IMG/VR virus record: IMGVR_UViG_3300023296_000874
Location: 186,001 to 250,000 of that record
Reading direction: 5' to 3' (one strand)
Length of the DNA: 64,000 bases
This document shows, one piece after another, positions 763-61,485 of this stretch. Position numbers and translations under genes: made by a program. Positions within the stretch are counted from its first letter, which is position 1; each line of letters starts with the position of its first letter. The notes under the pieces were generated by a model, which saw only the letters and a program-made list of their open reading frames with translations, had not been told where the DNA came from and made no database searches.

Positions 763-778
763 CTACAAAGGGATCATG
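763..778 (-). promoter_or_regulatory. Conserved 16-bp motif (putative late promoter)
   Basis: + strand ctacaaagggatcatg, 26 nt upstream of the NUDIX start. Confidence 0.65.
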
Positions 779-985
779 CCACAATGGAGTATGGAAGCTG
801 AGCACCCCTACAAGCAGTTCATCCTCGAGTGTCTGGCCTTGCTGCATCTACCCAGTGGAAAGTGGGAGGAGATTGCCAAGGACAGGAACTGGGCACTGCT
901 ATGGGCGTGGGGATGTGATCCATGCGAGGCGGTAGTCACCTACCTTCATGACAGCATGAGGGAGTACGATGTGATAGATGAATAA
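776..985 (+). CDS. Hypothetical protein
   Basis: 69-aa ORF filling a gap; no motif. Confidence 0.4.
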   Translation: MPQWSMEAEHPYKQFILECLALLHLPSGKWEEIAKDRNWALLWAWGCDPCEAVVTYLHDSMREYDVIDE

Positions 986-1043
986 GCTCGACATTCCGAC
1001 ACTCGTCCAAATCCTTGTCGAATGACTTGAACCGGAGGCCCAC

Positions 1044-1292
1044 ATGCCTGATACCCCCGTTACCAAAGATGAGATTGCTGAAGTAGCCAAGGACACCGCT
1101 GACACAGTAGCGGCAGAGTTCGCGGCAGAGCTCGGAGGGGATCACGGTCCCAACGGACCCGACATCAGCCCTGACCTACTCGCCCGGATGTTCGCCCGCG
1201 TGGGTTTCGTAGCGGAAGGCGAGTTGCGTCTACGCGCGGCCCTCACCCCTCCTGAGAAAGTCAAGCCGGACCCTGAGTTCGAAGTAGAGTAG
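1044..1292 (+). CDS. Hypothetical protein
   Basis: GGAGG RBS before ATG; typical codon usage. Confidence 0.6.
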   Translation: MPDTPVTKDEIAEVAKDTADTVAAEFAAELGGDHGPNGPDISPDLLARMFARVGFVAEGELRLRAALTPPEKVKPDPEFEVE

Positions 1293-1354
1293 GGCACTGC
1301 ACGTTCCGCCTGTCTGAGCGTTCTACGCTATATGACCACAAAGGAGCGCACGCC

Positions 1355-1741
1355 ATGACCCCCGACACCCTTGTCCGCGAAGAAGCGGAGACCATCATCG
1401 GGGCCTTGGAGGGGTCGCACGCCAATCGAGTCATCGCCGCATACATCGACCTCCGTGTTCGGGAATCCACCGCCCGTCGGAACGCTGTAGGAAATGTCTC
1501 CAAGTTCCTTGGGACTGCGGGGATGGTTGCGGCAGTGATCCTGTTGGGGTATGGTTTCAAAGTCTGGATGTCTGCTGACGACGGCCTGGTTGCATATCAG
1601 GTACAAGCCCAAGAGGAGCTACGAGAAGTGAGAGCTGAATATCAAACAGAGCTATCCGAACAAGGTGCTCTACTTGACGCGGCCACAGTTGAGAACACTC
1701 AACTGCGCGACAAGTGTATTGACGGCATACTCACCCAGTAG
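1355..1741 (+). CDS. Hypothetical single-pass membrane protein with C-terminal coiled coil
   Basis: AAGGAG RBS; hydrophobic FLGTAGMVAAVILLGYGF then QAQEELREVRAEYQTELSE. Confidence 0.6.
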   Translation: MTPDTLVREEAETIIGALEGSHANRVIAAYIDLRVRESTARRNAVGNVSKFLGTAGMVAAVILLGYGFKVWMSADDGLVAYQVQAQEELREVRAEYQTELSEQGALLDAATVENTQLRDKCIDGILTQ

Positions 1742-1780
1742 CTCTGGTCCCACCGGAGCTGCGTAGCTACCGGAATCAAC

Positions 1781-2446
1781 ATGGGCAGGAAGAAGAGGCG
1801 CGGACGTAGCAGCTACGTCGTCACGCGCACATCCAAGAAGAACGTCCCTGGATCGGGGACTCCGAAGCACCGCTTCGCTCAACACCTCGAAAGGGATGGG
1901 CAGAAGCAGCAGCTCAGCGGGAACCTCCGCGAGTGCGCCATCCCTTCCGGCGTCCCCGCCACCCACACCAGCTACCGAGGCGGCTGCAACTACAAGCTCA
2001 TCCGGGCCTACGAGGTGAGCGATCCTCGCGGGTACGGCCTCTCCGGTGGTGGCAACATCAAGCAGCGCCTCTACCACGGCACCCGCGAAACCTCCGCTGC
2101 TCACATCATGCTCCAGAGCTTCAAGCTCCCTGCACACGGAGGCATGTTCGGGAAGGCCATCTACCTGACCCCCAACATCGGGAAGGCTTTCGGGTTCACA
2201 GACTCCAAAAACCCGATCATCCTGGTGTGCGATGCCAACCTGGGCCGCGTCCGAACCTTCAACGAGTCGGATCGCGGCCTTGATTTGTTCAGCGCCAACA
2301 ATGCAGGGTTCGACACCGCCTTCGGTGAGCGTGGCGTGACTGCCTCGTGGGGTGGCTCCCTTACCTTCAGCGAGTACGCGGTGTACGACCCCAACCGCAT
2401 TCGCATCCGGTACTTGCTCGAATACAAGGCAGCGAACCAGAAGTAG
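1781..2446 (+). CDS. PARP-family (H-Y-E) ADP-ribosyltransferase catalytic domain
   Basis: RLYHGT, GMFGKAIYLT, IILVCDANLG, SEYAVYDPNRIRIRYL. Confidence 0.85.
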   Translation: MGRKKRRGRSSYVVTRTSKKNVPGSGTPKHRFAQHLERDGQKQQLSGNLRECAIPSGVPATHTSYRGGCNYKLIRAYEVSDPRGYGLSGGGNIKQRLYHGTRETSAAHIMLQSFKLPAHGGMFGKAIYLTPNIGKAFGFTDSKNPIILVCDANLGRVRTFNESDRGLDLFSANNAGFDTAFGERGVTASWGGSLTFSEYAVYDPNRIRIRYLLEYKAANQK

Positions 2447-2468
2447 TGTCTATGGAGTAGGAGGTGCC

Positions 2469-2711
2469 ATGGAAGACGAACACGAGCACAGGTGGATCGC
2501 CCTTTCACCAAGTGATGAGACCGGAGTTGCCTACCGCTGCTACGGCTGCAACAGTAGCAAGTTCGTGGAGAGCCCCCGATGCCAATGCGCAGAGGGAAAC
2601 CATGGGACTCACTGGTCTGGGGGCCGTGTCTGGCCGAACAGGCGCATTGATGGTGGGTATTGCTCGATGTGTAGCCTGCTTGTCACCAGCGACGATGACG
2701 ACTGCTGGTGA
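2469..2711 (+). CDS. Small Cys/His-rich (Zn-binding) protein
   Basis: GGAGG RBS before ATG 2469; CYGC, CQC, CSMC. Confidence 0.55.
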   Translation: MEDEHEHRWIALSPSDETGVAYRCYGCNSSKFVESPRCQCAEGNHGTHWSGGRVWPNRRIDGGYCSMCSLLVTSDDDDCW

Positions 2712-2891
2712 TTTAGAGAGCACTTCGCACTTCTGGCAACGCTCAGGGGTTGTAGGAGATGTAGACCGCACCACCGCAAGGTGAGCGGGATGCTGGTGGG
2801 CCGCTCGGGAATACTGAGTGGTGAATGCGACGGGATTCGAAACATCGTTCGCTAATCAACACAAGCCCTCTGGGCTATTGAGGATACCGCC

Positions 2892-3914
2892 ATGACTATC
2901 AAGTGGACCGACATCACCCGCTTCAACAACCTGCGCCGTGGGTACCAGCTCCGAGAGGAGCGCGTACAGATTCCGCAGCCGACCCTGTCCTTCCGTGGGA
3001 AGGTGAAGCTCGACGGTACCAACGCTGCTGTACGGGTTGACCCCCGCTTCGTTGAGGGGCCTGGCTACCACGCTCAGAGCCGCTCCCGTGACATCGGCCT
3101 GTCTGATGACAACATGGGCTTCGCTGCCTGGGTTGAGCTCAACCGCAACTACTTCCTCCGACTTCGAGATGCTGCGGGCAAGACCGTAGTGATCTTCGGT
3201 GAGTGGTGTGGCAAGGGCATCCAGAAGCGTTGCTCCATCTCCAAGATCGACCGCAAGGTGTTCGCCGTGTTCGCCATCGAGGCGCACTTCCCCGAGGGGG
3301 AGGACACCAAGACCCGGATCCTCGTGGACCCGGACCTGATTCGTTCCCACCTCCCCGACCACCCGGACATCTACGTGATCCCGTGGGCCGAGGGTGAGGA
3401 CGTGACGGTGGACTTCGCGGATACCGAGAGCCTGGACGCCGCCGCGCTGATCTTCAACGAGCGCATCGACGAGGTTGAGACCTGCGACCCTTGGGTCAAG
3501 GCTACCTTCGACGTTGACGGGCTTGGGGAAGGCCTCGTGTACTACCCGCTGCTCCCCGGCGTAATCGGCAGCTCTGCTGTACGGGACGACGTGACCAGTG
3601 CCATGTTCAAGGCGAAGGGCGAGAAGCACGAAGTGAAGAAGCGGAAGAAGGCCGTTGAGGTGGACACCGAGGTGGTTGCCTCCGTTGAGGCCTTCGTGGA
3701 GATGTTCGTTACCGACAACAGGTGCGAGCAGGCTGTCACTACCGCGTGCAACGGTGAGTACGACCGCGTGTTCACCGGCAACTTCCTTCAGTGGGTTGGT
3801 GGCGACATCAAGAAGGAAAGTGGCGACGAGCTTGAGGCTGCTGGCCTCACCTGGAAGCAGGTGGGCAAGGGAGTTCAGAAGGCTGCTCGCACCTGGTTCT
3901 TCGCCCGCGCGTGA
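2892..3914 (+). CDS. RNA ligase, Rnl2 family
   Basis: Motifs KLDGTN (I), FGEWCG (III), EGLV (IV), FKAKGEKH (V) plus Rnl2-like C-terminal domain (FVTDNRCEQ...DIKKE). Confidence 0.85.
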   Translation: MTIKWTDITRFNNLRRGYQLREERVQIPQPTLSFRGKVKLDGTNAAVRVDPRFVEGPGYHAQSRSRDIGLSDDNMGFAAWVELNRNYFLRLRDAAGKTVVIFGEWCGKGIQKRCSISKIDRKVFAVFAIEAHFPEGEDTKTRILVDPDLIRSHLPDHPDIYVIPWAEGEDVTVDFADTESLDAAALIFNERIDEVETCDPWVKATFDVDGLGEGLVYYPLLPGVIGSSAVRDDVTSAMFKAKGEKHEVKKRKKAVEVDTEVVASVEAFVEMFVTDNRCEQAVTTACNGEYDRVFTGNFLQWVGGDIKKESGDELEAAGLTWKQVGKGVQKAARTWFFARA

Positions 3915-4357
3915 AAGGCGTCTACCAAACCAACGTCTCGGACGGGGAGGAGTCCAACTGTTGTGCCGCAGCAGTTGCGACCCTCTTCGACCTTGCGTTG
4001 GTGGACGTGCCACCTCTGCTGGGAGACTTTGAGCAGGCTTCGAACCTGATCCGGTTCTTCCACTCGCGGGGCTACCGGCACGCCATGTTCGTTGGTCAGC
4101 GTGGCAAGGGTCCCACCCTACAGGAATGCGCAGAGTACGACGGTGGCGTCGAAGGCTACTTCTACGCTGCTGTTCCGTCCAAGACCTTCAAAGGCGGCTC
4201 CCACGCTGTGATTGTGGATACCGCCCTGAAGGTCGTGTGGGATCCTAATCCCAACCAGCTCGCGCTGAGCACCCTACCCGAAGAAGTGACGGGCATATGG
4301 GTGATTGGGGGTTGGTTCATCAACCCCGCAGGCGAGTTCTACTGGCTTGACGAGTAG
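3911..4357 (+). CDS. Hypothetical protein, possible papain-like (C39-like) peptidase
   Basis: NCCAAAVA ... SHAVIV ... VWDPNP, a Cys-His-Asp arrangement; GTGA overlap with the ligase stop. Confidence 0.4.
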   Translation: MKGVYQTNVSDGEESNCCAAAVATLFDLALVDVPPLLGDFEQASNLIRFFHSRGYRHAMFVGQRGKGPTLQECAEYDGGVEGYFYAAVPSKTFKGGSHAVIVDTALKVVWDPNPNQLALSTLPEEVTGIWVIGGWFINPAGEFYWLDE

Positions 4358-4651
4358 CTACCCCTCAACAGTCAAATCACCCGTGTCACCGTCGCCGTCC
4401 TCGTCAATGGCGAGGATCGCTTCTTCCTGGATCACCAGGAAGGTCTTGCCGTTCCCGTCCTTGACTTCGAGGCAGTGCTTGCGCTGAACGAGCACGGTGT
4501 TCTTGCGCTGCACAATGGTCACCTCAGGACCCTTGGCGAACACGGAGCCGCGAACCACGTCGACGTTCTCGTCGGGAAGGTGAAGGCCGCTTTCGGTCTG
4601 CTTCTTGTTGAGGGGCTCGATGAGCAGGCGGTCAAATACAGGTCTGAGCAT
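4358..4651 (-). CDS. groES: Co-chaperonin GroES (Cpn10)
   Basis: LRPVFDRLLIEP, mobile loop TESGLHLPD, GSVFAKGP, LVIQEEAILAI. Confidence 0.85.
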   Translation of the reverse strand: MLRPVFDRLLIEPLNKKQTESGLHLPDENVDVVRGSVFAKGPEVTIVQRKNTVLVQRKHCLEVKDGNGKTFLVIQEEAILAIDEDGDGDTGDLTVEG

Positions 4652-4699
4652 TGGTGTTTCTCCAGGTTGTACCTGTCCAACACCGTCACGGGCTCAGTT

Positions 4700-5179
4700 T
4701 CAGTATTTCTTACCGTCGAGCGTGGCTCGAGTACCCAACGCCCGGTCCACCCAATCGCTCCGGACGCCCCAGTTCAGATGCTGGTTCTTGCCCATGTGGT
4801 GAGCGTAGTGCGTAGTCGCGTGCTGCAAGGCCCATGCGGGGTTCTTGTGTGCCTTCCGATGCACTCGGATGTAGCTGAGGCCACTCAGTACGAGCCCAAG
4901 CACGAACCCGGCAATGAACCATCCGCCGAGCAGTAGGAGCGGGAGGTGGATCGCTACAGCGAAGGTCACCCAAAGGGCCTCACGTCGGGATCCGATGTCG
5001 TGCATGTTCTGACGGCGGCAGTTTCGGTGGTGCTCTCGGAAGTGGAACGCGAACATGTGGTCTTTCTTGAACCCAAACGGGTGAAGCAGCCATCTGTGGA
5101 TCGCATACTCAACGACATGCCCGTAAACCCAAGCAAGTCCAAGACCAACCACCGCCAATAGAACCATTGAAGCCTCCAC
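4700..5179 (-). CDS. Fatty acid hydroxylase / sterol desaturase family membrane enzyme
   Basis: His boxes EYAIHRWLLH, HFREHH, VHRKAH, HYAHH; NWGV..W.DRALGT; TM segments. Confidence 0.8.
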   Translation of the reverse strand: MEASMVLLAVVGLGLAWVYGHVVEYAIHRWLLHPFGFKKDHMFAFHFREHHRNCRRQNMHDIGSRREALWVTFAVAIHLPLLLLGGWFIAGFVLGLVLSGLSYIRVHRKAHKNPAWALQHATTHYAHHMGKNQHLNWGVRSDWVDRALGTRATLDGKKY

Positions 5180-5290
5180 TTCCTCCGCTGTCCGCGTACT
5201 GACTTCATTGTATGGGACACATGGATAAACCGCGATGAGTTCTCTGAGAAGCTCCTCATCTCACTCGTTACCTCGGAGCCGAAGCCGGAG

Positions 5291-5578
5291 GTGTCAGTGA
5301 AATTCCGAAGAGATGGGCAACGGAGCGCAGACTTCAGGAAGCCCTGCTACACCTACACGGTCCGAAACATCTGCTACATGCTGCTCCCTGAGTACAAGAC
5401 GGTCCAGAAGAAGGACTTCCGTAGGACGGGGAAGGCGTGGTGGTACGTCAAGGCAGGCAGGGTTGACATCCCGCCCTGCCTACGGTCTGCTCGCATGTTG
5501 ACCATTGCGGAAGCCTGCGCGTGGGCAGAGCGTGAGCTGTTCCCGACAAGATTGGCACTGCTTTTCGACGACGAATAG
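5291..5578 (+). CDS. Hypothetical protein
   Basis: GTG start after GGAG; stop abuts the glnS start. Confidence 0.5.
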   Translation: MSVKFRRDGQRSADFRKPCYTYTVRNICYMLLPEYKTVQKKDFRRTGKAWWYVKAGRVDIPPCLRSARMLTIAEACAWAERELFPTRLALLFDDE

Positions 5579-7189: not shown

Positions 7190-7192
7190 AAG

Positions 7193-7750
7193 ATGTACAC
7201 ACGCCACACTGCGACCCCACTTCCACGCGGCACCAAAGACGGCGACATGATGTCGATCCGCATCCTCGGTGACACGCCGGAGGATGGAGTGGAGGACTAC
7301 CCGTGCGAGTGGGTAGACGACGAAGCACCCGACGGCTACTGGGCTTGGGAGAACCGCTACGGCGAGAAGAGCTTCTACCCGGACGAGCTGGAAGACGACG
7401 TGGGTGCCAAGCTCTGCTGGATGGAGCTCCGACACTGCTGCGGCTCCATGCAGCAGCAGGTTGAGGGTTGCCACAAGCACCCCGAGGGCGAAGCGTGCCC
7501 GGACATCACCGTGCTCTACGACGCTCAGTACGACCGTTACTCACTGCCCCACTACCAGGGCATCATCGTGATGAAGTACTGCCCCTGGTGCGCCGCTGAC
7601 CGTGGCGACCGGATGGACCAGTGGTGGGCTCAGATTGAGAAGCTGCTCGGCGGCGACCCCGGTTTCGAGGAAGTGGCTGCCGCCAAGGCTGCTGGCAAGA
7701 TCCCCGACAAGTTCCTCACTGACGAGTGGTGGCGGAACCCAAGTGAGTAG
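7193..7750 (+). CDS. Cys-rich hypothetical protein (C-terminal half DUF6980-like, from recall)
   Basis: HCC..M...C.KH....CPD...YCPWC...D.WW..IE.L.G.DP...IP..F.TD.WW pattern. Confidence 0.5.
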   Translation: MYTRHTATPLPRGTKDGDMMSIRILGDTPEDGVEDYPCEWVDDEAPDGYWAWENRYGEKSFYPDELEDDVGAKLCWMELRHCCGSMQQQVEGCHKHPEGEACPDITVLYDAQYDRYSLPHYQGIIVMKYCPWCAADRGDRMDQWWAQIEKLLGGDPGFEEVAAAKAAGKIPDKFLTDEWWRNPSE

Positions 7751-7994: not shown

Positions 7995-8002
7995 GAAGAA
8001 CC

Positions 8003-8251: not shown

Positions 8252-8257
8252 GGCGTC

Positions 8258-8304: not shown

Positions 8305-8314
8305 CTCAGAGGGT

Positions 8315-9235: not shown

Positions 9236-9251
9236 GCACAAACGGATCATG
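9236..9251 (-). promoter_or_regulatory. Conserved 16-bp motif (putative late promoter)
   Basis: gcacaaacggatcatg, 31 nt upstream of the aldolase start. Confidence 0.6.
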
Positions 9252-9292
9252 AAACGTGTTGAAGAGTGGGAACCCCTTACGCGAGGAGCTGA

Positions 9293-10043: not shown

Positions 10044-10166
10044 AGTGTCGCGCTCCTTTGTTTGGTTAGGGGCTATTGAACACCCCCAATACGCAGGAGT
10101 TAGAATGCGAAGATGTGCAGTGTGCATTTTCTCTGACTTACTCGTGGTTCGGAGCGTTGTACCCAT

Positions 10167-12506: not shown

Positions 12507-12508
12507 GA

Positions 12509-13596: not shown

Positions 13597-13612
13597 CTAC
13601 AAAAGCATCATG
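13597..13612 (-). promoter_or_regulatory. Conserved 16-bp motif (putative late promoter, variant)
   Basis: ctacaaaagcatcatg; overlaps the CCA-gene TGA. Confidence 0.55.
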
Positions 13613-14822
13613 AAAGCATCTTGCTCACTGCCAGGTCCAGCTTGCGAGCCGAGATGTCCGGCTCTTGCAGGATGAGCCCACGCGCGTACGTCACGGGGAG
13701 GGATCGGTCCCGCCCTTGGAGGCTGTTCTCGTTGATGTGGCGCATGTTGTCCACCGGGGGCTTCGTGAGCTTCTTGAGGAAGTCCTGTGCGTCATCCCTT
13801 TGCATCGGCGTGGTCAGCTCCCGCAGGCGCTTCTGCTGGTCACGGTCAAGGAAGGTGATGGGGCTCTTGACGCTCAGGCCCAAGTCCATCAGGTCGAGCA
13901 GTAGCGCAACATCGCGGTCCTTGAGCTGGCGGCTCAGGTACGTGGCGAAGGGGCGCTGCTCCTGAACCATCTCAGCGATCACGTCGAGCAGTCCGAGCTT
14001 CTTCATCAGCTTGAGCGCATCCCGCGCCGTTGCTTCGTTCAGCACGTTCTCAACCAGGATCGTAGCGATTGCCTCCCACGGAGCCCGCTTCATGGCGGGT
14101 GCGTTGCGCTTGATGCTGGCAGCGAGGTCCTTGGGGATCTTGAAGCCGTACTTCGCAACGAACTTGATGGCGCGGAGCAGTCGTGTGGGGTCGTCGCTGA
14201 AGACGACGTCAGGGTCACGGGGGCAAGCCATCGTGCGGCTCTCCAGGTCGCGGATGCCGCAACCCGTGAGGTCGATCACTTCAGCCTTCTCCGGTCCGTT
14301 CGTCAGGTCCATCAGCCGCCAGAGCAGCGTGTTGAACGTGAACTCGCGGCGGTAGATGTCCTCCTCAACCGTGGCGTCTTCAACCATGTGAGGCTTGTAC
14401 CCCTGGCCTCCGGCTCCACCGTAGGATTCCTTTCGGGAGTTGGCGATCTCGATCACCTCCCCCTTCATCTCCACCCCGTCCAGAGTCCACTCACCCTTCA
14501 CCGTGATGATGGCGACGTTGTACTGGTTGGTCGTCAGGTCGGTCTGAGTGGGGATCGCCCGCTCAACTTCCTTGGCGAACCACTCGGAGTTCTTCTTGCC
14601 GCCCAAGGCCACGGAGTCGACTACGACGTCGATGTCCTTGATGGGCATGTCGATCAGGAAGTTCCGCACTGCACCACCGACAACGTACACGTGTCGGCCT
14701 ACACCCAGCCGGGTGGACAGGCGGGCAAGGAACTTCATCAATGCGTGAGAACGCTTGACAGCGTTTGCTGTCACGAGCTCTGCGGCGAGTTTGTCTGCGA
14801 TGTCTGTCATGGTGTACCTCAC
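13608..14822 (-). CDS. Class II tRNA nucleotidyltransferase (CCA-adding / PolyA_pol family)
   Basis: VYVVGGAVRN..KDIDV (DxD), EDIYRREFTFN, FSDDPTRLLRAIKF; no HD domain; no PAP upstream signature. Confidence 0.85.
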   Translation of the reverse strand: MRYTMTDIADKLAAELVTANAVKRSHALMKFLARLSTRLGVGRHVYVVGGAVRNFLIDMPIKDIDVVVDSVALGGKKNSEWFAKEVERAIPTQTDLTTNQYNVAIITVKGEWTLDGVEMKGEVIEIANSRKESYGGAGGQGYKPHMVEDATVEEDIYRREFTFNTLLWRLMDLTNGPEKAEVIDLTGCGIRDLESRTMACPRDPDVVFSDDPTRLLRAIKFVAKYGFKIPKDLAASIKRNAPAMKRAPWEAIATILVENVLNEATARDALKLMKKLGLLDVIAEMVQEQRPFATYLSRQLKDRDVALLLDLMDLGLSVKSPITFLDRDQQKRLRELTTPMQRDDAQDFLKKLTKPPVDNMRHINENSLQGRDRSLPVTYARGLILQEPDISARKLDLAVSKMLS

Positions 14823-15215
14823 CTATGTCACGATAACGATAGGAGTATCAGACAAGTCAGAGAGCAAAGCTGTGCGAACCGCAGTTGTAGGATACTTGAC
14901 AATCTGGAAGTTGAGGCGTCGCTGGCCCCATGGATCCGTAGCGGAAGCGCGGTAGTCCCACCGGATCTGATAGCATCCAGCGGGCTGTCCTCCGGGAATC
15001 ACCCAGTCCACCCAGTACTTCCCAGCCGTGGAGCTTGCCTCGGGTGTCTGCCGGTTCAGCGTGGAGCCGAGAGACGTGAAGGTTCCGTCCCCGTTGACCA
15101 AGTAGATGGAGTACCTGATGGTGTAGGTGGTGACTGGGGTTCCGGTGCGGTCAGTGAAGATCGCACGTAGGTCGCTCTCACCGAGCTCCTGCCCTTTCTG
15201 ATATACTACGCCCAT
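14823..15215 (-). CDS. Ig-like virion protein
   Basis: Aligns by eye with the N-domain of 12509..13393 (GQ..G..EL.I..T...G......I.Y.I...G.Y.....IP.....G.Y..RW). Confidence 0.55.
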   Translation of the reverse strand: MGVVYQKGQELGESDLRAIFTDRTGTPVTTYTIRYSIYLVNGDGTFTSLGSTLNRQTPEASSTAGKYWVDWVIPGGQPAGCYQIRWDYRASATDPWGQRRLNFQIVKYPTTAVRTALLSDLSDTPIVIVT

Positions 15216-16589: not shown

Positions 16590-16605
16590 CTACAAAAGGA
16601 TTAGG
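16590..16605 (-). promoter_or_regulatory. Conserved 16-bp motif (putative late promoter)
   Basis: ctacaaaaggattagg, 29 nt upstream of 16561. Confidence 0.65.
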
Positions 16606-16606
16606 G

Positions 16607-23872: not shown

Positions 23873-23888
23873 GTACAAACGGATTATG
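23873..23888 (-). promoter_or_regulatory. Conserved 16-bp motif (putative late promoter)
   Basis: gtacaaacggattatg, 42 nt upstream of 23831. Confidence 0.7.
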
Positions 23889-23897
23889 TCGCCGCGA

Positions 23898-25394: not shown

Positions 25395-25410
25395 CTACAA
25401 AAGGATTATG
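25395..25410 (-). promoter_or_regulatory. Conserved 16-bp motif (consensus copy)
   Basis: ctacaaaaggattatg, 46 nt upstream of 25349. Confidence 0.75.
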
Positions 25411-25471
25411 AGCAGTGCTCTCAAGAGTGATCACGACACAGGGAAAGCCCGTTTCGCTCGTCTTGACTGCG

Positions 25472-25487
25472 CTACAAATGGATTATG
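25472..25487 (-). promoter_or_regulatory. Conserved 16-bp motif (second, tandem copy)
   Basis: ctacaaatggattatg. Confidence 0.7.
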
Positions 25488-25490
25488 AAC

Positions 25491-29492: not shown

Positions 29493-29508
29493 CTACAAGT
29501 GGATTATG
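29493..29508 (-). promoter_or_regulatory. Conserved 16-bp motif (putative late promoter)
   Basis: ctacaagtggattatg; contains the TAA stop of 29504..29728. Confidence 0.7.
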
Positions 29509-29728
29509 AGTCCCTCTGCTCGGACGGCAGGAGTTTCAGCGGAGAATGCGCAAAAACTGGAGTCTCGGCGGTTCTATCCGCTCTGACTTGCCGGAGCTGA
29601 TCTGGCGTCAAGTGGCTGTCTTCGGTCACCAGAAAGAGCGGTGCCGGTGTGGTGTCGTAGGCTGAACAGATGCTCAAAACCTCATCCACGTCAGCGTCAC
29701 TGAGCACTACAAGTTCAAAACGGTCCAT
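29504..29728 (-). CDS. Small hypothetical protein
   Basis: AAGGAGG RBS. Confidence 0.55.
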   Translation of the reverse strand: MDRFELVVLSDADVDEVLSICSAYDTTPAPLFLVTEDSHLTPDQLRQVRADRTAETPVFAHSPLKLLPSEQRDS

Positions 29729-29753: not shown

Positions 29754-29769
29754 CTACAAACAGACCATG
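29754..29769 (-). promoter_or_regulatory. Weak copy of the 16-bp motif
   Basis: ctacaaacagaccatg, 26 nt upstream of 29728. Confidence 0.4.
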
Positions 29770-29773
29770 AGAA

Positions 29774-31381: not shown

Positions 31382-31397
31382 TTACAAACGGATTATT
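31382..31397 (-). promoter_or_regulatory. Conserved 16-bp motif (putative late promoter)
   Basis: ttacaaacggattatt, 56 nt upstream of 31326. Confidence 0.6.
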
Positions 31398-31479
31398 AGA
31401 TACGAAATCGCACGAATTGACGCTCGGACACGTTACAAGACTTGTAGCTGTGCTCTTTGACATACACGCAGGGATCAGG

Positions 31480-34457: not shown

Positions 34458-34473
34458 CTACAAAAGGATTATG
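34458..34473 (-). promoter_or_regulatory. Conserved 16-bp motif (consensus copy)
   Basis: ctacaaaaggattatg, 43 nt upstream of 34415. Confidence 0.75.
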
Positions 34474-34509
34474 AGAGTCTCGAGAGGAGATGGAGTGCAG
34501 CCCAGTACT

Positions 34510-40122: not shown

Positions 40123-40138
40123 CTACAAAAGGATTATG
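40123..40138 (-). promoter_or_regulatory. Conserved 16-bp motif (consensus copy)
   Basis: ctacaaaaggattatg, 41 nt upstream of 40082. Confidence 0.75.
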
Positions 40139-40147
40139 AGCCGAAGA

Positions 40148-43630: not shown

Positions 43631-43646
43631 GTACAAAAGGAATATG
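43631..43646 (-). promoter_or_regulatory. Conserved 16-bp motif (putative late promoter)
   Basis: gtacaaaaggaatatg, 47 nt upstream of 43584. Confidence 0.7.
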
Positions 43647-43658
43647 TCCGGTCTGGGA

Positions 43659-51954: not shown

Positions 51955-51970
51955 CTACAAATGGAATATG
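51955..51970 (-). promoter_or_regulatory. Conserved 16-bp motif (putative late promoter of the packaging operon)
   Basis: ctacaaatggaatatg, 40 nt upstream of 51915. Confidence 0.7.
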
Positions 51971-52022
51971 ACGGCTTGACTTCTCTGAGTATCTGGTTGT
52001 TTGAGGCGTTAGGGAGAGCAGA

Positions 52023-54432: not shown

Positions 54433-54468
54433 GTTCAGAGTGTCTCTCTTCCCAAAGGGAGCCACGTC

Positions 54469-54807: not shown

Positions 54808-54865
54808 CCTCTGAGTCTGTGCCGCCCTCACCGCGTTGAGGTAGTACAGCAAGGAGGCTCAGACA

Positions 54866-55051: not shown

Positions 55052-55055
55052 CATC

Positions 55056-56300: not shown

Positions 56301-56307
56301 GACAGAC

Positions 56308-57435
56308 ATGGAACCCGTAACGATCATCCTTCTCACCATCGGCGGCATCGGCTCCCTCCTCGCGGCGGGAGCGGGTGGTGTAGCGGTGGGCGTAGCTGGG
56401 GCAAAAGCCTCAATGCCCGAGCCCGAGCCCGTGGACTCTGACCCGGTTGGGGCCATCCGTCTTCAGGAAGACCTCGACTACGCCCAGCGTCGGTTGGCGG
56501 ATGCTCATGAAGACCTGGCGCGTGCCGGGGGTGACCGGGACCGCTACAGGACGATGGCTGAATCTCACGACATTCACATGCCGGAGGTAGCCGAGACTCA
56601 GATGGTGGAACGGAGCGTGTGGAAAGACCGCCGCTACCGTGCCCACCCACGAGACATCCTCACCAACCTCGCAACGGACCTGGAGGAGTACGCAGGATCT
56701 GACCTCACGCTCACCATCTCCATCTCAGGCAAGGGTGGCTGGGCAGACCATCTCAAGGAGCGATGGTTCAAGACCGAGAGCCAGCGTGATCGCTACGGGC
56801 ACTACAAGGAAGTGAAGGTGCCCATCAAGGAGATCAAGGGATTCACCTTCGAGGGACCGCCAGACCGAGTGATCGACCACCTCCGCACCCTCCTCACGGA
56901 TGACGACACGGGCCTCGTGACCGTTGCGGCGGTTGACTGTATGGACACTGCGTCAGGCTCCGACCGATTCGTAGGCCCGACCGACAAGATTGCCCTCGCG
57001 GGCAAGCCTTCCGCCAGGAAGGCGACCGTGGTGCCTCAGGCGAAGTTCTGGAGGGACTCCGACTCCCCGCTCCTCGTGAAGGCGAAGCTCACCGTGCGCG
57101 AAGAGGTGAAATCCCCACCCGCGCCGGAGGTGCAGATCGTTGAGGTGCTGGTGGTTCAGGAGCGCATTGTGGAGCGCATCGTTGAGAAGCCGGTGATTGT
57201 GGCCGTGCCCTCCGGTACGGAGCAGGACTTGTGCGGCCACACCCGCGAGGAGATCTCAGACCTCATCTCCGTAGAGCTTGAGCTTGCTCAGCTTGAGGGC
57301 GGACTCAAGCGAGTAGCGACGGCCTCACTCGCAAGAGCGGAGGCCGAAGTAGAGGCGGCACGCCCGGCTGATGATGTAGACGAGAGGCTCAGGAGGGCTC
57401 GGGCAGCGTCCCTTGCTCGGCAGCCTGGATCCTGA
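56308..57435 (+). CDS. N-terminally anchored membrane protein with coiled coils
   Basis: Hydrophobic N-terminus; heptad segments. Confidence 0.6.
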   Translation: MEPVTIILLTIGGIGSLLAAGAGGVAVGVAGAKASMPEPEPVDSDPVGAIRLQEDLDYAQRRLADAHEDLARAGGDRDRYRTMAESHDIHMPEVAETQMVERSVWKDRRYRAHPRDILTNLATDLEEYAGSDLTLTISISGKGGWADHLKERWFKTESQRDRYGHYKEVKVPIKEIKGFTFEGPPDRVIDHLRTLLTDDDTGLVTVAAVDCMDTASGSDRFVGPTDKIALAGKPSARKATVVPQAKFWRDSDSPLLVKAKLTVREEVKSPPAPEVQIVEVLVVQERIVERIVEKPVIVAVPSGTEQDLCGHTREEISDLISVELELAQLEGGLKRVATASLARAEAEVEAARPADDVDERLRRARAASLARQPGS

Positions 57436-58065: not shown

Positions 58066-58632
58066 TCACCTTTCGAGAGCTACCTTCTTGCCGTGGTTGC
58101 GCTCATCCTTCACCCAACGCCAGAAGCGTCCGATGGGGAACGCTTTGTGCTCACCCTCGCGGTAGAAGCCCGGTCGAGGGTAGTGCTTCTTGTAGGCCCC
58201 GATGGCTTCCTCTACAGAGTCGAAGCCGATCATCACCTTGTCCTCATCGAACCCGCCGTCAGGCATGTGCTGGTGAATGACAAGCACGAGTGAGCTGTCG
58301 TGGTTGGGGCCAACGTACACGTCAAGCAGGTCGCCGTCTGTGGCCTCTGTCCCCCTGATCTCGCCGTAGTGGTGGTGCATGTAGCGCCTCCACTTCTTGC
58401 CTTCAGGGTTGGTCTTCTCGCGGTACTGTCCGGCCTTGACCTCAATGTCAATCTCAAGCCCTTGGAAGTCCACGTAGCCAACGAACGGCTTCTTCTTGGC
58501 TGGCTCGACCTTCACCTTGTGGAACGAGTGCGGCACCTCAACGATGCCATCGTCAGAGGCTACACGCGCGGGACTCAGACGCATCCGAGCCGCCACGTTC
58601 GCAAGGTGGTTGATTGTGTCCTGGGTTACCAT
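58066..58632 (-). CDS. InPase-domain (inorganic pyrophosphatase-like) protein
   Basis: GLEIDIE..AG..R....GKKW...M..HYGEI.GT...DGD.LDVYVGP ... FDEDKVMIGF.S.EEA..AY. Confidence 0.75.
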   Translation of the reverse strand: MVTQDTINHLANVAARMRLSPARVASDDGIVEVPHSFHKVKVEPAKKKPFVGYVDFQGLEIDIEVKAGQYREKTNPEGKKWRRYMHHHYGEIRGTEATDGDLLDVYVGPNHDSSLVLVIHQHMPDGGFDEDKVMIGFDSVEEAIGAYKKHYPRPGFYREGEHKAFPIGRFWRWVKDERNHGKKVALER

Positions 58633-61007
58633 TCGTCCACCTCGATCTCATCCTCATCGTCAAATTCATCATCCTCATCGTCGTAGCCGTCGTCATTGAC
58701 GTGGTACTCAACGCGGTAGGCGCTCTCTGCTGAGGCGCTCCAATGCGCAATGCTGTTGCCAGCCTCTTGTGAGGACTCACGGTAGGCGAGTTCATTGTGT
58801 CGCTCGCTCCGCACGTCAGGGAACACCATGTCTGCCATGTGCCGGTCCCTTTCACTGTCGACGCCATGTACCTGGCCGTAGGTCGGTGGAGCCTTCTTGG
58901 GGAGTGCGGCTTGTACCTCGCGCCAGTTGTCCTTCACCCACTGCATGATCATGCTGCCGGGGATTTCCTTCTTGGTCCGCTTGCGGAGTTGAAGGTTGAT
59001 GCGTGAGCTGAAGCTCTTGCCGTCAACATACTCGTACTCCACGGTAGCGCTCAACACCTTGCGGATCACATCGTCGGGGCTGATCTTCCCGAGCATCAGC
59101 TCCTTGACGTAGGGGTCAAGAGCGCGCAAGCCCTTGTTCATCATCCGTCGCAGGTACTTGTCCAGCAGGCTCACCATCCCGCGCGGGGTCTTGGCAAAGT
59201 CGTCCTGGCCGAGGGTGCTCACGGTGTACTTCTTGTCCTCGAAGCTCACCTTCACCTCAAGCATCTTCAGGGCCTTCCACGAGTCCTCGCCACCGTCAGG
59301 GTCAAACTCGCCCTGGAGAGTGTACTCACCGCTGGCAATGGACCCCCACTCATTCCAGGTGATGTCAGCGCCGGGCAGGATGTTGATCACGGAGTGCTTC
59401 GCAGCTTTCACAGCCACCGCAATCGCGGCCATATGCGCCGGGTCAGGCTTGCCCCGTGATCCAGAAATAGTCGCAATGCCCTCCGGAGTAAGTAGTGCGA
59501 GAACCTGCTTGAACACCTTGCGGCCATCAGGCATGTCCTTCTGTCTCCGGAACAGGTCCTTCATTCCGCGTGTTCCAGCAACGTTCGGGTACACAAGGCA
59601 GTCTCGAGTCTTGCTCGCGTTTGACCACCCGCCCACTTCCATCTTCACGATGGTGTACTTGCCTACCTTGAGCCGGTGGTCCACTACGGACCCCATGGAG
59701 ATGCTGCTGTCAATGTGGATGTTCGCCCGCCTCCACTTCTTCTGGAACAGGTTCTCCAGCTCAATCATCCAAGGCTCTGGAGTGGTGGATACCTGACTCC
59801 CGTAGTACGTGGCGAGCTTGGCAATCTTGGCAGAGGCAACGCGGGGATTCTTGAACCGGAAGGGACGTCCCTTCCACTTGGCAGCCATGAGGCGGCGGAT
59901 GGCGACGTAGTTGGGTCCGAGGAACGCCCGGATCTCAGCCTTCACCTGGCCGAAGTTGCGCTGCACGTACCGGATGTTGCCCCATGTCCTCTTCTTGCGG
60001 AGGATCTCCTTGATCAGCTTCTTCCCGTCCTTGGGGCCAGTGCTCTCAAGGAGCTTCACGCCGATGTTGTTCGGGAACCAGTCCGGGTGGCCGTAGGTCT
60101 CGCCGTTCACGGTCACTGAGTAGAGGCCAGGGTTTTTGGCCCAGGCGCGGTAGCCCTCGGTGCGTCCCTTCATGAACTCGGAGAAGCGCCGTCCAAGCAC
60201 CTCCATTCCCTTGACGATGTCCTTCGGGCTGCTTGGATCGTAGAGGAAGTCGAACGGCATGGTCACGCCGCGCAACGAGCCTATGCCCTTCTGGTAGAGC
60301 TCAGGGGCGTCCTTCTCGAGGTTGAAGCCCGTGGGAGGCTTCTTGATCTCGTTCATCCAGACGGTGTCGTCCTTGCCCCGTCCCTTCTCATCACGCTGAC
60401 GCTTGGTGGGGAGATCAACGAGGTAGGAGCTCAGGTTCGAGGCGTCCACAATGGGAGGCTGTCCGTCGAACCTCATGTCGCCGTGGTGTAGCCCGCGCTG
60501 GATGCTGTAGTCGATTGGGTGTGTGGGAGCAAGCTGCTTGAGGACGGCCTTGTTCCGGATGCCCTTTCCCTGCCATACACCACGCCCGGAGATGCACTGC
60601 TCAAGCTTCCGCTTCACATGCCGTCCAGATACCCTTCCACCTCGAGCAACGAAGACGTGCTGCTCAGCCAGGTCAACGGCGGTGAATTGAGCCAGGGTCC
60701 ACTTCCCCATCTCTGCGAACAGCTTGAGCCAGTCGAGTACCACCATGACGTCAACGTCCGAGGTGTCGTTCCACTGGTAGGAGGCCGCACCGCCCTGAAT
60801 GCCCATTGCAAGCACCCAATCACTGACTGGTCCGGGCCATCCCTGCTGCTCAAGGTACTCGTAGAACTCGCCCTCAAGGCGGTCAAGGACTTCCTCTTTG
60901 ACGTAGGCGAGCTTCCGACGATCGTCCCAAGCCCACAGCCAATCCATGCGGTTGTCCAATACCGGGTCAAACACTCCGGCAGTACGGAACAGGTGGTCAA
61001 TGCTCAT
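58626..61007 (-). CDS. Multidomain protein with N-terminal Pol-beta-superfamily nucleotidyltransferase
   Basis: IQGGAASYQWNDTSDVDVMV = hG[GS]x10DhD. Confidence 0.65.
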   Translation of the reverse strand: MSIDHLFRTAGVFDPVLDNRMDWLWAWDDRRKLAYVKEEVLDRLEGEFYEYLEQQGWPGPVSDWVLAMGIQGGAASYQWNDTSDVDVMVVLDWLKLFAEMGKWTLAQFTAVDLAEQHVFVARGGRVSGRHVKRKLEQCISGRGVWQGKGIRNKAVLKQLAPTHPIDYSIQRGLHHGDMRFDGQPPIVDASNLSSYLVDLPTKRQRDEKGRGKDDTVWMNEIKKPPTGFNLEKDAPELYQKGIGSLRGVTMPFDFLYDPSSPKDIVKGMEVLGRRFSEFMKGRTEGYRAWAKNPGLYSVTVNGETYGHPDWFPNNIGVKLLESTGPKDGKKLIKEILRKKRTWGNIRYVQRNFGQVKAEIRAFLGPNYVAIRRLMAAKWKGRPFRFKNPRVASAKIAKLATYYGSQVSTTPEPWMIELENLFQKKWRRANIHIDSSISMGSVVDHRLKVGKYTIVKMEVGGWSNASKTRDCLVYPNVAGTRGMKDLFRRQKDMPDGRKVFKQVLALLTPEGIATISGSRGKPDPAHMAAIAVAVKAAKHSVINILPGADITWNEWGSIASGEYTLQGEFDPDGGEDSWKALKMLEVKVSFEDKKYTVSTLGQDDFAKTPRGMVSLLDKYLRRMMNKGLRALDPYVKELMLGKISPDDVIRKVLSATVEYEYVDGKSFSSRINLQLRKRTKKEIPGSMIMQWVKDNWREVQAALPKKAPPTYGQVHGVDSERDRHMADMVFPDVRSERHNELAYRESSQEAGNSIAHWSASAESAYRVEYHVNDDGYDDEDDEFDDEDEIEVDEW

Positions 61008-61444
61008 CGGTTCTCTCCGAAGTGTGCGCCGCCGAGGGTCTGCTGTAGGAGCCGCTCGATGGCGTCAAGCTGTCGGCTCAGATGGAGCGCGGCAGGCTCC
61101 ATCCTCTCATCGCGTGCGTGAATGCCCAAGGCCAGTACGTGCTTGCACGGTCCAACACGGCGTCCATTCCTCTGCCAATCTTCACAGGTGCAGAGGTGTC
61201 CGCGTCGGGGGCGTAGGGTGATGTGAGGAGTGTAGATGTCGCCCTGGGAGCCTACGATGTCTCCCCAGATGCGGTCGTCATCGTACTGTAGGTTCCGGAT
61301 GCGGATCTGATCCACCCGGCCCAACCGACGCTTCTCTCCAACCTCAATGAGGCGGTCGAGGGTCTCACGATGAACGCTAACGAGTCCTGCCCACTCTCGT
61401 ACTTGCTCGAGTAGCTGCGGGATGGTGTCCTGAAGCTCTGGCAT
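61004..61444 (-). CDS. SWIM zinc-finger protein
   Basis: Y.PHI....HLCTCEDW....GPCKHVLAL. Confidence 0.75.
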   Translation of the reverse strand: MPELQDTIPQLLEQVREWAGLVSVHRETLDRLIEVGEKRRLGRVDQIRIRNLQYDDDRIWGDIVGSQGDIYTPHITLRPRRGHLCTCEDWQRNGRRVGPCKHVLALGIHARDERMEPAALHLSRQLDAIERLLQQTLGGAHFGENR

Positions 61445-61469
61445 GGGACCTCCTTACGAGGGACAGCCC

Positions 61470-61485
61470 CCACAAAAGGATTATG
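61470..61485 (-). promoter_or_regulatory. Conserved 16-bp motif (putative late promoter)
   Basis: ccacaaaaggattatg, 26 nt upstream of 61444; contains the asnB TAA. Confidence 0.7.

What the first reader, a model, noticed from the sequence alone, without database searches (positions are those of the whole stretch)
763..61485. Phage-specific 16-bp late-promoter motif, 15 copies, all one orientation
Seen: + strand consensus (c/g)(t/c)ACAAANGGATTATG, i.e. coding strand CAT[A/G]ATCCnTTTGTAG. Copies are at 763, 9236, 13597, 16590, 23873, 25395, 25472, 29493, 29754 (weak), 31382, 34458, 40123, 43631, 51955 and 61470. A 17-nt variant sits at 33128 before the decoration/MCP genes and a weak one at 5215. 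Every copy is 19-56 nt upstream of a minus-strand start (the second of the tandem pair is 123 nt) and marks an operon head. No -35 element is apparent, and none was noticed before plus-strand genes. Established: T4-type late promoters are single -10-like boxes read by a phage sigma factor. Inference: it defines the late regulon and places the isolated NUDIX (291), aldolase (8621) and SWIM-NTase-InPase operon in it.
Basis: partly seen in the sequence, partly recalled or inferred. Interest (0 to 1): 0.7.

Follow-up and report, generated by a model that had tools for sequence, protein, structure and literature searches.

The report
Late-gene promoter of a huge phage
A 17-base motif repeated about 30 times in an uncultured salt-lake jumbo phage is most likely its own promoter for virion, assembly and lysis genes, an ordinary kind of element, except that no protein able to read it can be recognised in the genome.

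Summary
All 15 listed copies are real. The consensus is one base longer than reported: T-CATAATCC-n-TTTGTAG, 17 nt, 24.6 bits. The two "weak variants" (33128, 5215) are not members.

The window lies in a 257.5-kb IMG/VR myovirus record (60% GC, salt-lake metagenomes). That record carries 29 copies. 28 are intergenic, and all point toward the next gene. 11 sit at divergent junctions.

22 of 29 copies head sheath, baseplate, tail-fibre, portal, protease/scaffold/capsid, terminase and endolysin-like operons. A second motif, TCTrAsTT-N15-CGTTa (ECF-sigma-like), heads replication, aminoacyl-tRNA synthetase (aaRS) and metabolic genes.

The 17-mer is therefore best read as the late promoter. It has no -35 element. 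Its 5' half (cAtaaT) looks like a -10 box, which places the start near the G of TTTGTAG.

The "T4-type, phage sigma" part is not supported by test. No gp55-family, sigma-70-family, T7-like or multisubunit RNA polymerase gene was found in the record. The precomputed Pfam listings for a further 64 kb recovered from other assemblies show none either. Positive controls worked.

No RNA data exist, so transcription start sites are inferred. I file it as a new member of a known kind. The unidentified reader is the interesting residue.

The parts
763..779 (-). class-1 17-mer GCATGATCCCTTTGTAG; 25 nt before the NUDIX gene (291-737)
   Evidence: PWM 21.0. NUDIX: phrog_1198, E 1.8e-14. Sits at a divergent junction.
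9236..9252 (-). class-1 17-mer TCATGATCCGTTTGTGC; 30 nt before the class II aldolase gene (8621-9205)
   Evidence: PWM 21.3. Aldolase_II, E 8.8e-31. The divergent gap is 87 bp.
13597..13613 (-). class-1 17-mer TCATGATGCTTTTGTAG; 20 nt before a 60-aa ORF followed by a 294-aa connector-like protein; overlaps the stop of the upstream CCA-nucleotidyltransferase-like gene
   Evidence: PWM 25.6. phrog_17327, weak. phrog_2244 for the upstream gene.
16590..16606 (-). class-1 17-mer CCCTAATCCTTTTGTAG; 28 nt before the 187-aa gene (15998-16561)
   Evidence: PWM 22.8
23873..23889 (-). class-1 17-mer ACATAATCCGTTTGTAC; 41 nt before the 673-aa gene; the operon continues to the 1140-aa protein
   Evidence: PWM 25.7
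25395..25411 (-). class-1 17-mer, perfect consensus; 45 nt before the 224-aa gene (24675-25349); proximal member of the tandem pair
   Evidence: PWM 31.8
25472..25488 (-). class-1 17-mer TCATAATCCATTTGTAG; distal member of the tandem pair, 122 nt before the same start
   Evidence: PWM 31.2
29493..29509 (-). class-1 17-mer TCATAATCCACTTGTAG before the 341-aa gene (28410-29435)
   Evidence: PWM 26.6
29754..29770 (-). weakest accepted class-1 copy, TCATGGTCTGTTTGTAG; 25 nt before a 74-aa ORF (29504-29728)
   Evidence: PWM 18.6. A Shine-Dalgarno (SD) sequence plus ATG is seen in the context. The ORF is listed.
31382..31398 (-). class-1 17-mer TAATAATCCGTTTGTAA; 55 nt before the 220-aa gene (30664-31326), just downstream of the major capsid gene
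   Evidence: PWM 24.1
34458..34474 (-). class-1 17-mer, perfect consensus; 42 nt before the acidic scaffold-like gene (33189-34415), followed by the decoration-like gene and the major capsid protein (31567-32460)
   Evidence: PWM 31.8. The capsid protein is 80% identical to LR745208 and 48% to the Tunturi_5 major head protein.
40123..40139 (-). class-1 17-mer, perfect consensus; 40 nt before the 306-aa gene; the operon runs to the prohead protease (34836-36317)
   Evidence: PWM 31.8. Protease: phrog_18299. A GGTAGGGT box sits at the orthologous place in G006 and G007.
43631..43647 (-). class-1 17-mer ACATATTCCTTTTGTAC; 46 nt before the 279-aa gene, then a cement-like 197-aa protein and the portal (40148-41752)
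   Evidence: PWM 25.7. Portal: phrog_16240, E 1.5e-35. Cement-like look-alikes.
51955..51971 (-). class-1 17-mer TCATATTCCATTTGTAG; 39 nt before the Dps-like 274-aa gene; the operon runs to the large terminase (43659-45470); back-to-back with a class-2 site 12 nt away
   Evidence: PWM 29.5. Weak Dps matches. Terminase: phrog_17415. Class-2 site at 51984.
61470..61486 (-). class-1 17-mer ACATAATCCTTTTGTGG; 25 nt before the SWIM / 793-aa / InPase operon; its TAA is the stop of the asparagine-synthase-like gene
   Evidence: PWM 26.6. SWIM. InPase, E 2.4e-36. Asn_synthase.
10132..10158 (+). class-2 bipartite site TCTGACTT-N15-CGTT before the plus-strand gene 10167-10607.
   Evidence: PWM 36.7
51984..52010 (+). 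class-2 site TCTGAGTA-N15-CGTT heading the plus-strand block 52023-57435
   Evidence: PWM 19.3. The block encodes cytidylyltransferase-like, Aldolase_II and ARD proteins.
14835..14861 (-). class-2 site TCTGACTT-N15-CGTT; 24 nt before the CCA-nucleotidyltransferase-like gene (13608-14810)
   Evidence: PWM 31.5. phrog_2244.

Best explanation
The 17-mer T-CATAATCC-n-TTTGTAG is this phage's own promoter for the late class of genes: virion structure, assembly, packaging and lysis, plus some auxiliary genes.

It is a single contiguous element with no -35 partner. Its 5' half, cAtaaT, has the near-invariant A and invariant T of a -10 hexamer. Counting from there, the conserved CC is the discriminator and TTTGTAG spans the start site. 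Transcription would begin at or within about 3 nt of the G of TTTG.

I infer that host core RNA polymerase reads it after being redirected by a phage protein not yet recognisable by sequence, either a sigma-like factor or a sigma-70 appropriator.

A separate bipartite ECF-sigma-like promoter class (TCTrAsTT-N15-CGTTa) drives the replication, aaRS and metabolic genes.

Shown: the motif itself, its positions and orientation, the gene classes it precedes, and the absence of known polymerase or sigma genes.
For: - 29 copies score >=18.6 against a noise ceiling of 13.9. There are 3 more in the 64 kb recovered from other assemblies.
- 28 of 29 are intergenic in an 89%-coding genome (p=1e-26). Every copy points at the next gene. 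In 25 of 29 a Shine-Dalgarno-plus-start pattern lies 12-57 nt downstream.
- 11 of 29 lie at divergent junctions, where no upstream co-directional transcript can exist. These include gaps of 87-135 bp. One is a back-to-back pair whose 17-mers overlap by 6 nt (genome 72746-72773), leaving only 26-nt and 36-nt leaders.
- No other column from -60 to +70 is conserved, so the core promoter must lie within the motif.
- 22 of 29 copies lie in structural blocks, against 4 of 34 for class 2 (Fisher p=3.6e-7).
- Downstream genes: sheath, baseplate J, tail spike, tape measure; portal, protease, terminase; capsid; cement protein; PG_binding endolysin-like.
- The shortest spacing to a start codon is 12 nt, with the SD inside it. 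The start site therefore cannot lie far beyond the motif's 3' end.
- The motif is 69% A+T in a 60% G+C genome.
- Sigma-70-type promoters are not enriched.
- No multisubunit or T7-like polymerase gene was found. Some clade members carry sigma-70-like ORFs and none carries Rpb1. This favours host polymerase plus phage factors in this clade.
Against: - There is no transcript evidence of any kind. No RNA run was listed.
- No candidate reader was found. gp55 profiles, Sigma70 r2, r4 and r4_2, the Tunturi_5 gp3 family and the relatives' sigma-like ORFs all miss.
- 17 contiguous conserved bases and 24.6 bits are more than sigma-type -10-only promoters usually show (8 nt in T4, from general knowledge). 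This fits single-subunit polymerase promoters better.
- The genome is still open at both ends, so a reader gene could lie in an unseen part.
- Seven copies head non-structural or unknown genes. 'Late' is therefore a label by majority content.
- The motif is not conserved in relatives, so there is no phylogenetic footprint.
Confidence: 0.55

Rival explanations
1. It is a late promoter, but it is read by a phage-encoded RNA polymerase that escapes recognition. This could be a divergent single-subunit or other non-canonical enzyme, encoded in the unseen part of the genome or among the large proteins with no family hit. Transcription would start at the final G, as in T7-type promoters.
For: - The element is contiguous, 17 nt, 24.6 bits, with no -35 element. 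An A+T-rich stretch ends in GTA followed by G. From general knowledge, this is the architecture of T7/T3/SP6 promoters.
- Neither promoter class of the phage resembles sigma-70 promoters, which are not enriched.
- The genome is incomplete: CheckV 81%, and both ends are still open after 64 kb of extension.
- Several proteins of 583-1610 aa have no family or PDB match.
Against: - PF00940 finds T7 RNA polymerase but nothing here.
- No Rpb1 or Rpb2 domains were found.
- No DxDGD-type catalytic motif occurs in any large protein.
- Precomputed Pfam for the extension genes shows no polymerase.
- The complete relatives G001 and G012 lack Rpb1 too. Some clade members encode sigma-like proteins instead.
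Confidence: 0.2
2. It is the binding site of a phage late activator or other DNA-binding regulator placed next to promoters. The true core promoter is a weak, unconserved host-type element nearby.
For: The position upstream of genes and the strict orientation would also fit a class I/II activator site. No reader of a novel promoter was found.
Against: - The motif is asymmetric, with no dyad, unlike most dimeric regulator sites.
- No -10-like or -35-like column is conserved on either side of it.
- The spacing to the start codon can be as short as 12-26 nt, leaving no room for a separate core promoter downstream.
- At the overlapping divergent pair there is no room upstream either.
- The motif itself contains the -10-like cAtaaT.
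Confidence: 0.12
3. It acts in RNA. It would be a processing site, or the target of an RNA-binding or translational regulator, in the leaders of polycistronic late transcripts.
For: It is in sense orientation, in leaders upstream of Shine-Dalgarno sequences. 18 of 29 copies follow a co-directional gene and so would be transcribed through.
Against: - 11 of 29 copies are at divergent junctions with no upstream co-directional gene. In the 87-135-bp gaps nothing else is conserved that could be the promoter supplying such an RNA.
- The overlapping back-to-back pair would place each copy upstream of any possible start for its own operon.
- The flanks show no conserved secondary structure.
Confidence: 0.06

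Closest known systems
T4 late promoters (TATAAATA at about -13 to -6; gp55 sigma, gp33 co-activator, gp45 clamp). General knowledge, plus the T4 record seen.
   Same: Both are a single box in the -10 region with no -35 element. Both are specific to the phage and head virion and lysis genes. Here the near-invariant A at box position 2 and the invariant T at position 6 behave like the flipped -11 and -7 bases of -10 elements (PMC7598289 for base flipping).
   Different: This element is 17 nt and 24.6 bits rather than 8 nt, and it extends through the predicted start site. The sequence is unrelated to TATAAATA. No gp55-family gene was found, although the same profiles find T4 gp55. The phage is not T4-like: its capsid and portal relate it to phage G, Tunturi_5 and LR745208.
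Single-subunit (T7/T3/SP6-type) RNA polymerase promoters. General knowledge, plus the T7 record.
   Same: Both are contiguous, highly conserved motifs of about 17-23 bp repeated through the genome. Both have an A+T-rich stretch immediately before a G start and no -35/-10 bipartition.
   Different: No T7-like polymerase gene was found, although PF00940 rings in T7. There is no sequence similarity to any known promoter of that group.
Promoters of polymerase-encoding jumbo phages: phiKZ late T(-3)ATG(+1); AR9 late A(-11)ACA-N6-UA/G (PMC7598289).
   Same: Both belong to jumbo phages with phage-specific promoter classes that do not resemble host sigma-70 promoters.
   Different: Those phages encode split beta/beta' polymerases. 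None is detectable here or in relatives. According to that review, their late motifs are too short to be found bioinformatically, whereas this one is long and obvious.
ECF-sigma promoters (AAC-N16/17-CGT; general knowledge). Comparator for the second motif, not the 17-mer.
   Same: Class 2 is TCT(G/A)A(C/G)TT-N15-CGTT(a). That is AAC or GAC, then 17 nt, then CGTT, with a short leader of about 21-25 nt to the start codon.
   Different: No sigma-70-family gene was detected in this phage. The -35 part differs between clade members while the -10 CGTTA is kept: G006 has gaaTCGTGTAAtc-N14-CGTTAC.

Membership tests
T4-type late promoter system | Single -10-region box, no -35 element | tested here: met
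   No column between -60 and -1 exceeds the 99th percentile of random columns apart from the motif itself.
T4-type late promoter system | Box of 8 nt with consensus TATAAATA | tested here: not met
   The consensus is TCATAATCCnTTTGTAG, 17 nt and 24.6 bits.
T4-type late promoter system | Phage encodes a gp55-family sigma | tested here: not met
   phrog_234 and phrog_12791 find T4 gp55 (E 2.5e-70 and 7e-8). They find nothing in G000, G006, G007, G001, G012 or Tunturi_5. The 64 kb of extension were not scanned with these two profiles.
T4-type late promoter system | Dependence on the gp33 co-activator and on a sliding clamp loaded on replicating DNA | not tested
   A clamp-loader-like AAA+ protein and a DNA_pol3_delta2 protein exist. 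No gp33 or clamp search was run, and functional coupling needs experiments.
Bacterial/phage promoter (any class) | Primary transcript 5' ends at a fixed distance from the motif | not testable with these tools
   No RNA run was listed for this sequence. The DNA runs hold it only as near-clonal contigs.
Sigma-70-family-dependent phage promoters (SPO1 gp28/gp34 type, ECF type) | Phage-encoded sigma with recognisable region 2 or region 4 | tested here: not met
   Sigma70_r2 best E 0.26, r4_2 none, r4 E 0.09 on the non-coding strand. A region-2 signature regex finds nothing plausible in the 322-kb composite. Some relatives do have such ORFs, but those ORFs have no match here.
T7-like single-subunit polymerase promoters | Genome encodes a PF00940 RNA polymerase | tested here: not met
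   PF00940 scores E 9.9e-110 in T7 and gives no candidate in G000. No such Pfam hit appears among the extension genes.
T7-like single-subunit polymerase promoters | Contiguous conserved element of about 17-23 bp ending at the start site | tested here: inconclusive
   Length and contiguity fit. The start site is unknown.
phiKZ/AR9-type non-virion polymerase promoters | Split beta/beta'-like polymerase genes | tested here: not met
   There are no Rpb1_2 or Rpb2_6 matches and no DxDGD motif in large proteins. Very divergent homologues could still escape these models.

The most novel reading that the evidence does not exclude
This phage runs two phage-specific promoter classes, a 17-nt late box and an ECF-like bipartite class. 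Relatives keep the class-2 -10 CGTTA with lineage-specific -35 parts. Yet no sigma factor or RNA polymerase is recognisable in at least 322 kb. The factor and its box would have diverged together with the lineage: relatives have a different short box, GGTAG(A/G)GT, at some of the same positions.
Probability: 0.25. Interest if true: 0.75.

Novelty: new member of a known kind. Interest (0 to 1): 0.45.

Why it matters
Phage-specific late promoters are a textbook idea, so the element itself is expected.

It has practical value. The 17-mer and the newly found class-2 motif together give an operon and timing map for about 85 transcription units of an uncultured phage of at least 322 kb. That phage belongs to a very large clade that has been little studied: more than 450 IMG/VR contigs share an ~80%-identical capsid protein.

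The map assigns auxiliary genes to the late programme. These include NUDIX, class II aldolase, the SWIM/InPase operon, a glycosyltransferase/asparagine-synthase operon and a sugar-nucleotide block.

The open question is what reads these promoters, because every known sigma and polymerase family tested negative. It could also be useful as an orthogonal expression part.

Tried and rejected
- **Close relatives for footprinting.**
  - The phages collection has no DNA-level relative.
  - A scaffold-protein search found nothing.
  - Portal relatives are only 40-53% identical.
  - Capsid relatives number 455, but all lack the 17-mer.
  - The motif scan of viral contigs returned single chance hits unrelated to this phage.
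  - So there is no phylogenetic footprint.
- **A guessed relatives' motif.** GGTAGGGTGnAnTGTA is not repeated in the relatives.
- **Reader hunt.**
  - The Tunturi_5 'sigma' gp3 has no Pfam domain and no homologue here or in G006/G007, even with a 35-sequence profile.
  - The syntenic 279-aa protein has no informative look-alike.
  - The 197-aa neighbour is a cement protein.
  - The conserved 274-aa 'DNA-binding' protein is Dps-like.
  - PDB sequence searches of four large or unknown proteins gave no informative match: three returned nothing, one a weak ribosomal-protein L13 hit at E 0.05.
- **Archaeal host or TATA-box reading.** Rejected. The proteome is only mildly acidic (median pI 5.5). About 80% of starts have an SD sequence, although my start-codon choice rewarded SD matches. 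The genes are of bacterial type: PolA, DnaB, OmpA.
- **Microdiversity test.** The population is near clonal. No variant falls in the five motif copies laid, but statistical power is negligible.
- **RNA runs.** None was listed.
- **IHF or DnaA-box reading.** Rejected by eye, because the spacing and sequence do not fit. This was not tested further.

Full report
**1. What the window is**

The window is bases 186001-250000 of a 257,533-bp linear IMG/VR virus record (CheckV 81% complete). G+C is 60%. I called 289 genes, 223 on the minus strand.

It is a jumbo myovirus:
- tail sheath, baseplate J, tail spike and tape measure
- portal, prohead protease and large terminase
- a capsid protein (window 31567-32460) 80% identical to the huge uncultured phage LR745208, 48% to Tunturiibacter phage Tunturi_5 and 37% to Bacillus phage G

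The DNA occurs in many salt-lake metagenomes as a nearly clonal population. The host is probably a Gram-negative bacterium:
- about 80% of called starts have a Shine-Dalgarno (SD) sequence, although my start-codon choice rewarded SD matches
- median protein pI is 5.5
- PolA, DnaB and OmpA-domain genes are present

**2. The observation**

The core pattern with at most one mismatch occurs 13 times in the window, all on one strand. Shuffles give 0.03. In the whole record it occurs 23 times forward and once reverse.

Read on the coding strand, the motif is T-CATAATCC-n-TTTGTAG. The extra 5' T is present in 19 of 26 seed copies. The 17 columns carry 24.6 bits.

A PWM scan separates 29 sites (score 18.6-31.8) from noise (13.9 or less). 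The 'variants' at 33128 and 5215 score below zero and are not members.

I walked out of both contig ends through other assemblies of the same phage. This added 45.8 kb on the left and 18.4 kb on the right, for a composite of 321,776 bp with the ends still open. The extensions hold three more copies.

**3. Position and orientation**

- 28 of 29 sites are intergenic in a genome that is 89% coding (p=1e-26).
- Every site points at the next gene on its own strand. In 25 of 29 a Shine-Dalgarno-plus-start pattern lies 12-57 nt downstream.
- The one-strand pattern in the window follows from where the late genes lie. It is not a property of the motif. Two copies in the record and one in the extension are on the plus strand, each before plus-strand genes.
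- Eleven sites are at divergent junctions.
- At genome 72746-72773 two copies sit back to back and share the palindrome TCATGA. This leaves leaders of only 26 and 36 nt.
- At two junctions (genome 119604/119617 and 237971/237984, the latter at window 51971/51984), a 17-mer and a class-2 site are back to back with the same 12-nt gap.
- Nothing else is conserved from -60 to +70. There is no -35 element and no separate -10 element.

These facts argue that the motif contains the core promoter. They argue against a purely RNA-level role. At divergent junctions no upstream transcript could carry the motif unless it starts within or right next to it.

**4. What it precedes**

Downstream operons:
- endolysin-like PG_binding protein
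- a sugar-nucleotide NTP_transferase block
- tail fibres and tail spike, baseplate, tape measure, sheath
- conserved neck and head proteins
- portal and cement protein
- protease, then scaffold, decoration and capsid
- the Dps-like to terminase operon
- a glycosyltransferase, epimerase and asparagine-synthase operon

InPase domains occur in phage head-internal proteins in PHROGs, which fits late expression. The 793-aa 'NTase' has no family hit.

**5. A second promoter class**

K-mer enrichment in upstream regions revealed a different, bipartite motif: cTCT(G/A)A(G/C)TT(t/c)c-N13-CGTT(a). About 38 intergenic copies lie in the record, and 55 in the composite at score 14 or more. They occur on both strands in proportion to the genes. 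They usually end 21-25 nt before the start codon.

The architecture AAC/GAC-N17-CGTT resembles ECF-sigma promoters (general knowledge).

This class heads topoisomerase, PolA, DnaB, SNF2 helicase, PhoH, aminoacyl-tRNA synthetases (aaRSs), RNA-repair and metabolic genes, and many small unknown genes. That set includes the window's plus-strand blocks.

The two classes are segregated. 22 of 29 class-1 sites lie in structural blocks, against 4 of 34 class-2 sites (Fisher p=3.6e-7). Sigma-70-type promoters and intrinsic terminators are not enriched in window 1-18000.

'Late' for the 17-mer rests on this division of labour, not on expression data.

**6. How it probably works**

In the 26 seed copies, CATAAT keeps A at position 2 in 25 of 26 and T at position 6 in all 26. 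Positions 4 and 5 vary (A/G and A/T/G/C). This echoes the -10 hexamer, whose -11 A and -7 T are flipped into sigma region 2 (PMC7598289). T at position 3, however, is more conserved here than in sigma-70 promoters.

Counting from there:
- CC-n is the discriminator
- TTT precedes the start
- the G of TTTG is +1

On this reading the motif spans about -13 to +4. The shortest leader is 12 nt from the motif end to the ATG, with the SD inside it. The start site therefore cannot lie far downstream of the motif.

The alternative is a T7-like reading, with the final G as +1 and the motif spanning -16 to +1. It fits the length, contiguity and information content at least as well. The two models differ by 4 nt in the start site and in rifampicin sensitivity.

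**7. Who reads it**

| Search | Result |
|---|---|
| PF00940 (T7-type polymerase) | Nothing; the same search finds T7 RNAP at E 1e-109 |
| Rpb2_6, Rpb1_2 | Nothing |
| Sigma70 r2, r4, r4_2 | Nothing credible |
| DxDGD-type motif | Absent from large proteins |
| Sigma region-2 signature | No plausible hit |
| gp55 profiles phrog_234, phrog_12791 | Nothing; they find T4 gp55 |
| Precomputed Pfam for extension genes | No polymerase or sigma |

Within the wider clade, no member tested has Rpb1. Several members have sigma-70-like ORFs: Tunturi_5 at E 1e-12, and weaker hits in G012 and G013. This favours host polymerase with phage factors as the clade's strategy. Those ORFs, and the Tunturi_5 gp3 family, have no detectable counterpart here.

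It may be too divergent for sequence methods, or it may lie in the unseen part of the genome.

**8. Relatives**

The 17-mer is absent from:
- LR745208 and Tunturi_5
- five portal relatives
- 80 capsid-relative loci

I took two relatives whole, G006 and G007. Their capsid is 81% identical to this phage's, while other proteins are 25-55% identical.
- G006 shows a class-2-like bipartite promoter with the same -10 element (CGTTAC) and a different -35 element: gaaTCGTGTAAtc.
- Both show a short box, GGTAG(A/G)GT, enriched 12-73 nt before genes of their structural blocks (p about 1e-7).
- In two cases the box sits at places orthologous to 17-mer sites here: before the gene preceding the protease cluster, and before the neck-gene pair.
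- The shared GTAG with TTTGTAG is suggestive only.

**9. Verdict**

The 'late promoter' reading is well supported by anatomy and regulon content. The 'T4-type, phage sigma' mechanism is untested at best and fails the one membership feature I could test.

The element is a new member of a known kind. Its length, and the absence of any recognisable reader, leave a modest chance of something new.

Noticed in passing
window 10132-10158 (+), 14835-14861 (-), 51984-52010 (+), 55001-55027 (+), about 5240-5270 (+); genome-wide about 38 copies, 55 in the composite: There is a second promoter-like motif, distinct and bipartite: cTCT(G/A)A(G/C)TT-N15-CGTT(a). It has ECF-sigma-like architecture and usually ends 21-25 nt before start codons. 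It heads replication, aaRS and metabolic genes on both strands.
   Followed up: partly
window 24999-25246, inside the 224-aa gene 24675-25349: A cluster of about 20 substitutions appears between otherwise near-identical populations from different salt-lake runs. It lies in the gene just downstream of the tandem promoter pair. It may be a hypervariable host-range or target region.
   Followed up: no
genome ends (record positions 1 and 257533); loci L157, L163, L168, L171, L284, L285, L290 (left) and L280, L288 (right): The record is incomplete. Other assemblies of the same phage extend it by 45.8 kb on the left (small genes, two more aaRSs, RNA ligase, Thg1, NUDIX, MazG). They extend it by 18.4 kb on the right (primase-like Toprim, clamp-loader-like protein, 5'-3' exonuclease, VWA, PD-(D/E)XK, NYN). 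The ends still do not meet at 321.8 kb.
   Followed up: partly
genome 72746-72773 (L013:12746-12773): Two 17-mers lie back to back and overlap in the palindrome TCATGA. They form a 28-bp perfect-looking divergent promoter pair between a sugar-nucleotide operon and a plus-strand block.
   Followed up: partly
window 51955-52010 and genome 119588-119643: A class-1 site and a class-2 site are arranged back to back with an identical 12-nt gap at two separate junctions. This suggests a fixed module, or interplay between the two promoter classes.
   Followed up: no
window 5606-7189 (+); genome 58817-60310; extension loci L163, L168: At least four aminoacyl-tRNA synthetase genes are present: GlnRS/GluRS-type, two class II D/K/N-type and a class Ib type. 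A CCA-adding-enzyme-like gene is also present. ARAGORN finds no tRNA gene in the 257-kb record. The relative Tunturi_5 carries 43 tRNAs (PMC11924767).
   Followed up: no
window 1781-2446 (+): This gene encodes a protein with a PARP catalytic (ADP-ribosyltransferase) domain (E 6e-16). From general knowledge, T4 uses ADP-ribosyltransferases to modify host RNA polymerase. It is a lead for host takeover and was not tested.
   Followed up: no
window 8621-9205 (-), 53324-53971 (+); genome 11712-13259: There are three class II aldolase paralogues. One is fused to a DFP flavoprotein domain. One lies next to an acireductone dioxygenase (ARD), which looks like methionine salvage. The paralogues are under different promoter classes.
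   Followed up: no
window 31567-32460 (-): The capsid protein is 78-82% identical across more than 450 IMG/VR contigs. Their G+C ranges from 34% to 68% and their sizes reach 619 kb. Portal, terminase and tail proteins of the same genomes are only 25-55% identical. This is unusually strong conservation of one protein.
   Followed up: no
relatives G006 (L254-L266) and G007 (L267-L279): G006 has gaaTCGTGTAAtc-N14-CGTTAC before about 30 genes. Both relatives have short boxes GGTAG(A/G)GT and GGCGTAAG close to start codons. These are likely their own promoter classes. The -10 CGTTA is shared with this phage's class 2.
   Followed up: partly
window 1-18000: Sigma-70-type promoter matches (2 found, 3.7 expected) and intrinsic-terminator-like hairpins (7 found, 10.9 expected) are not enriched. 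The phage seems to use neither canonical signal in this region.
   Followed up: no
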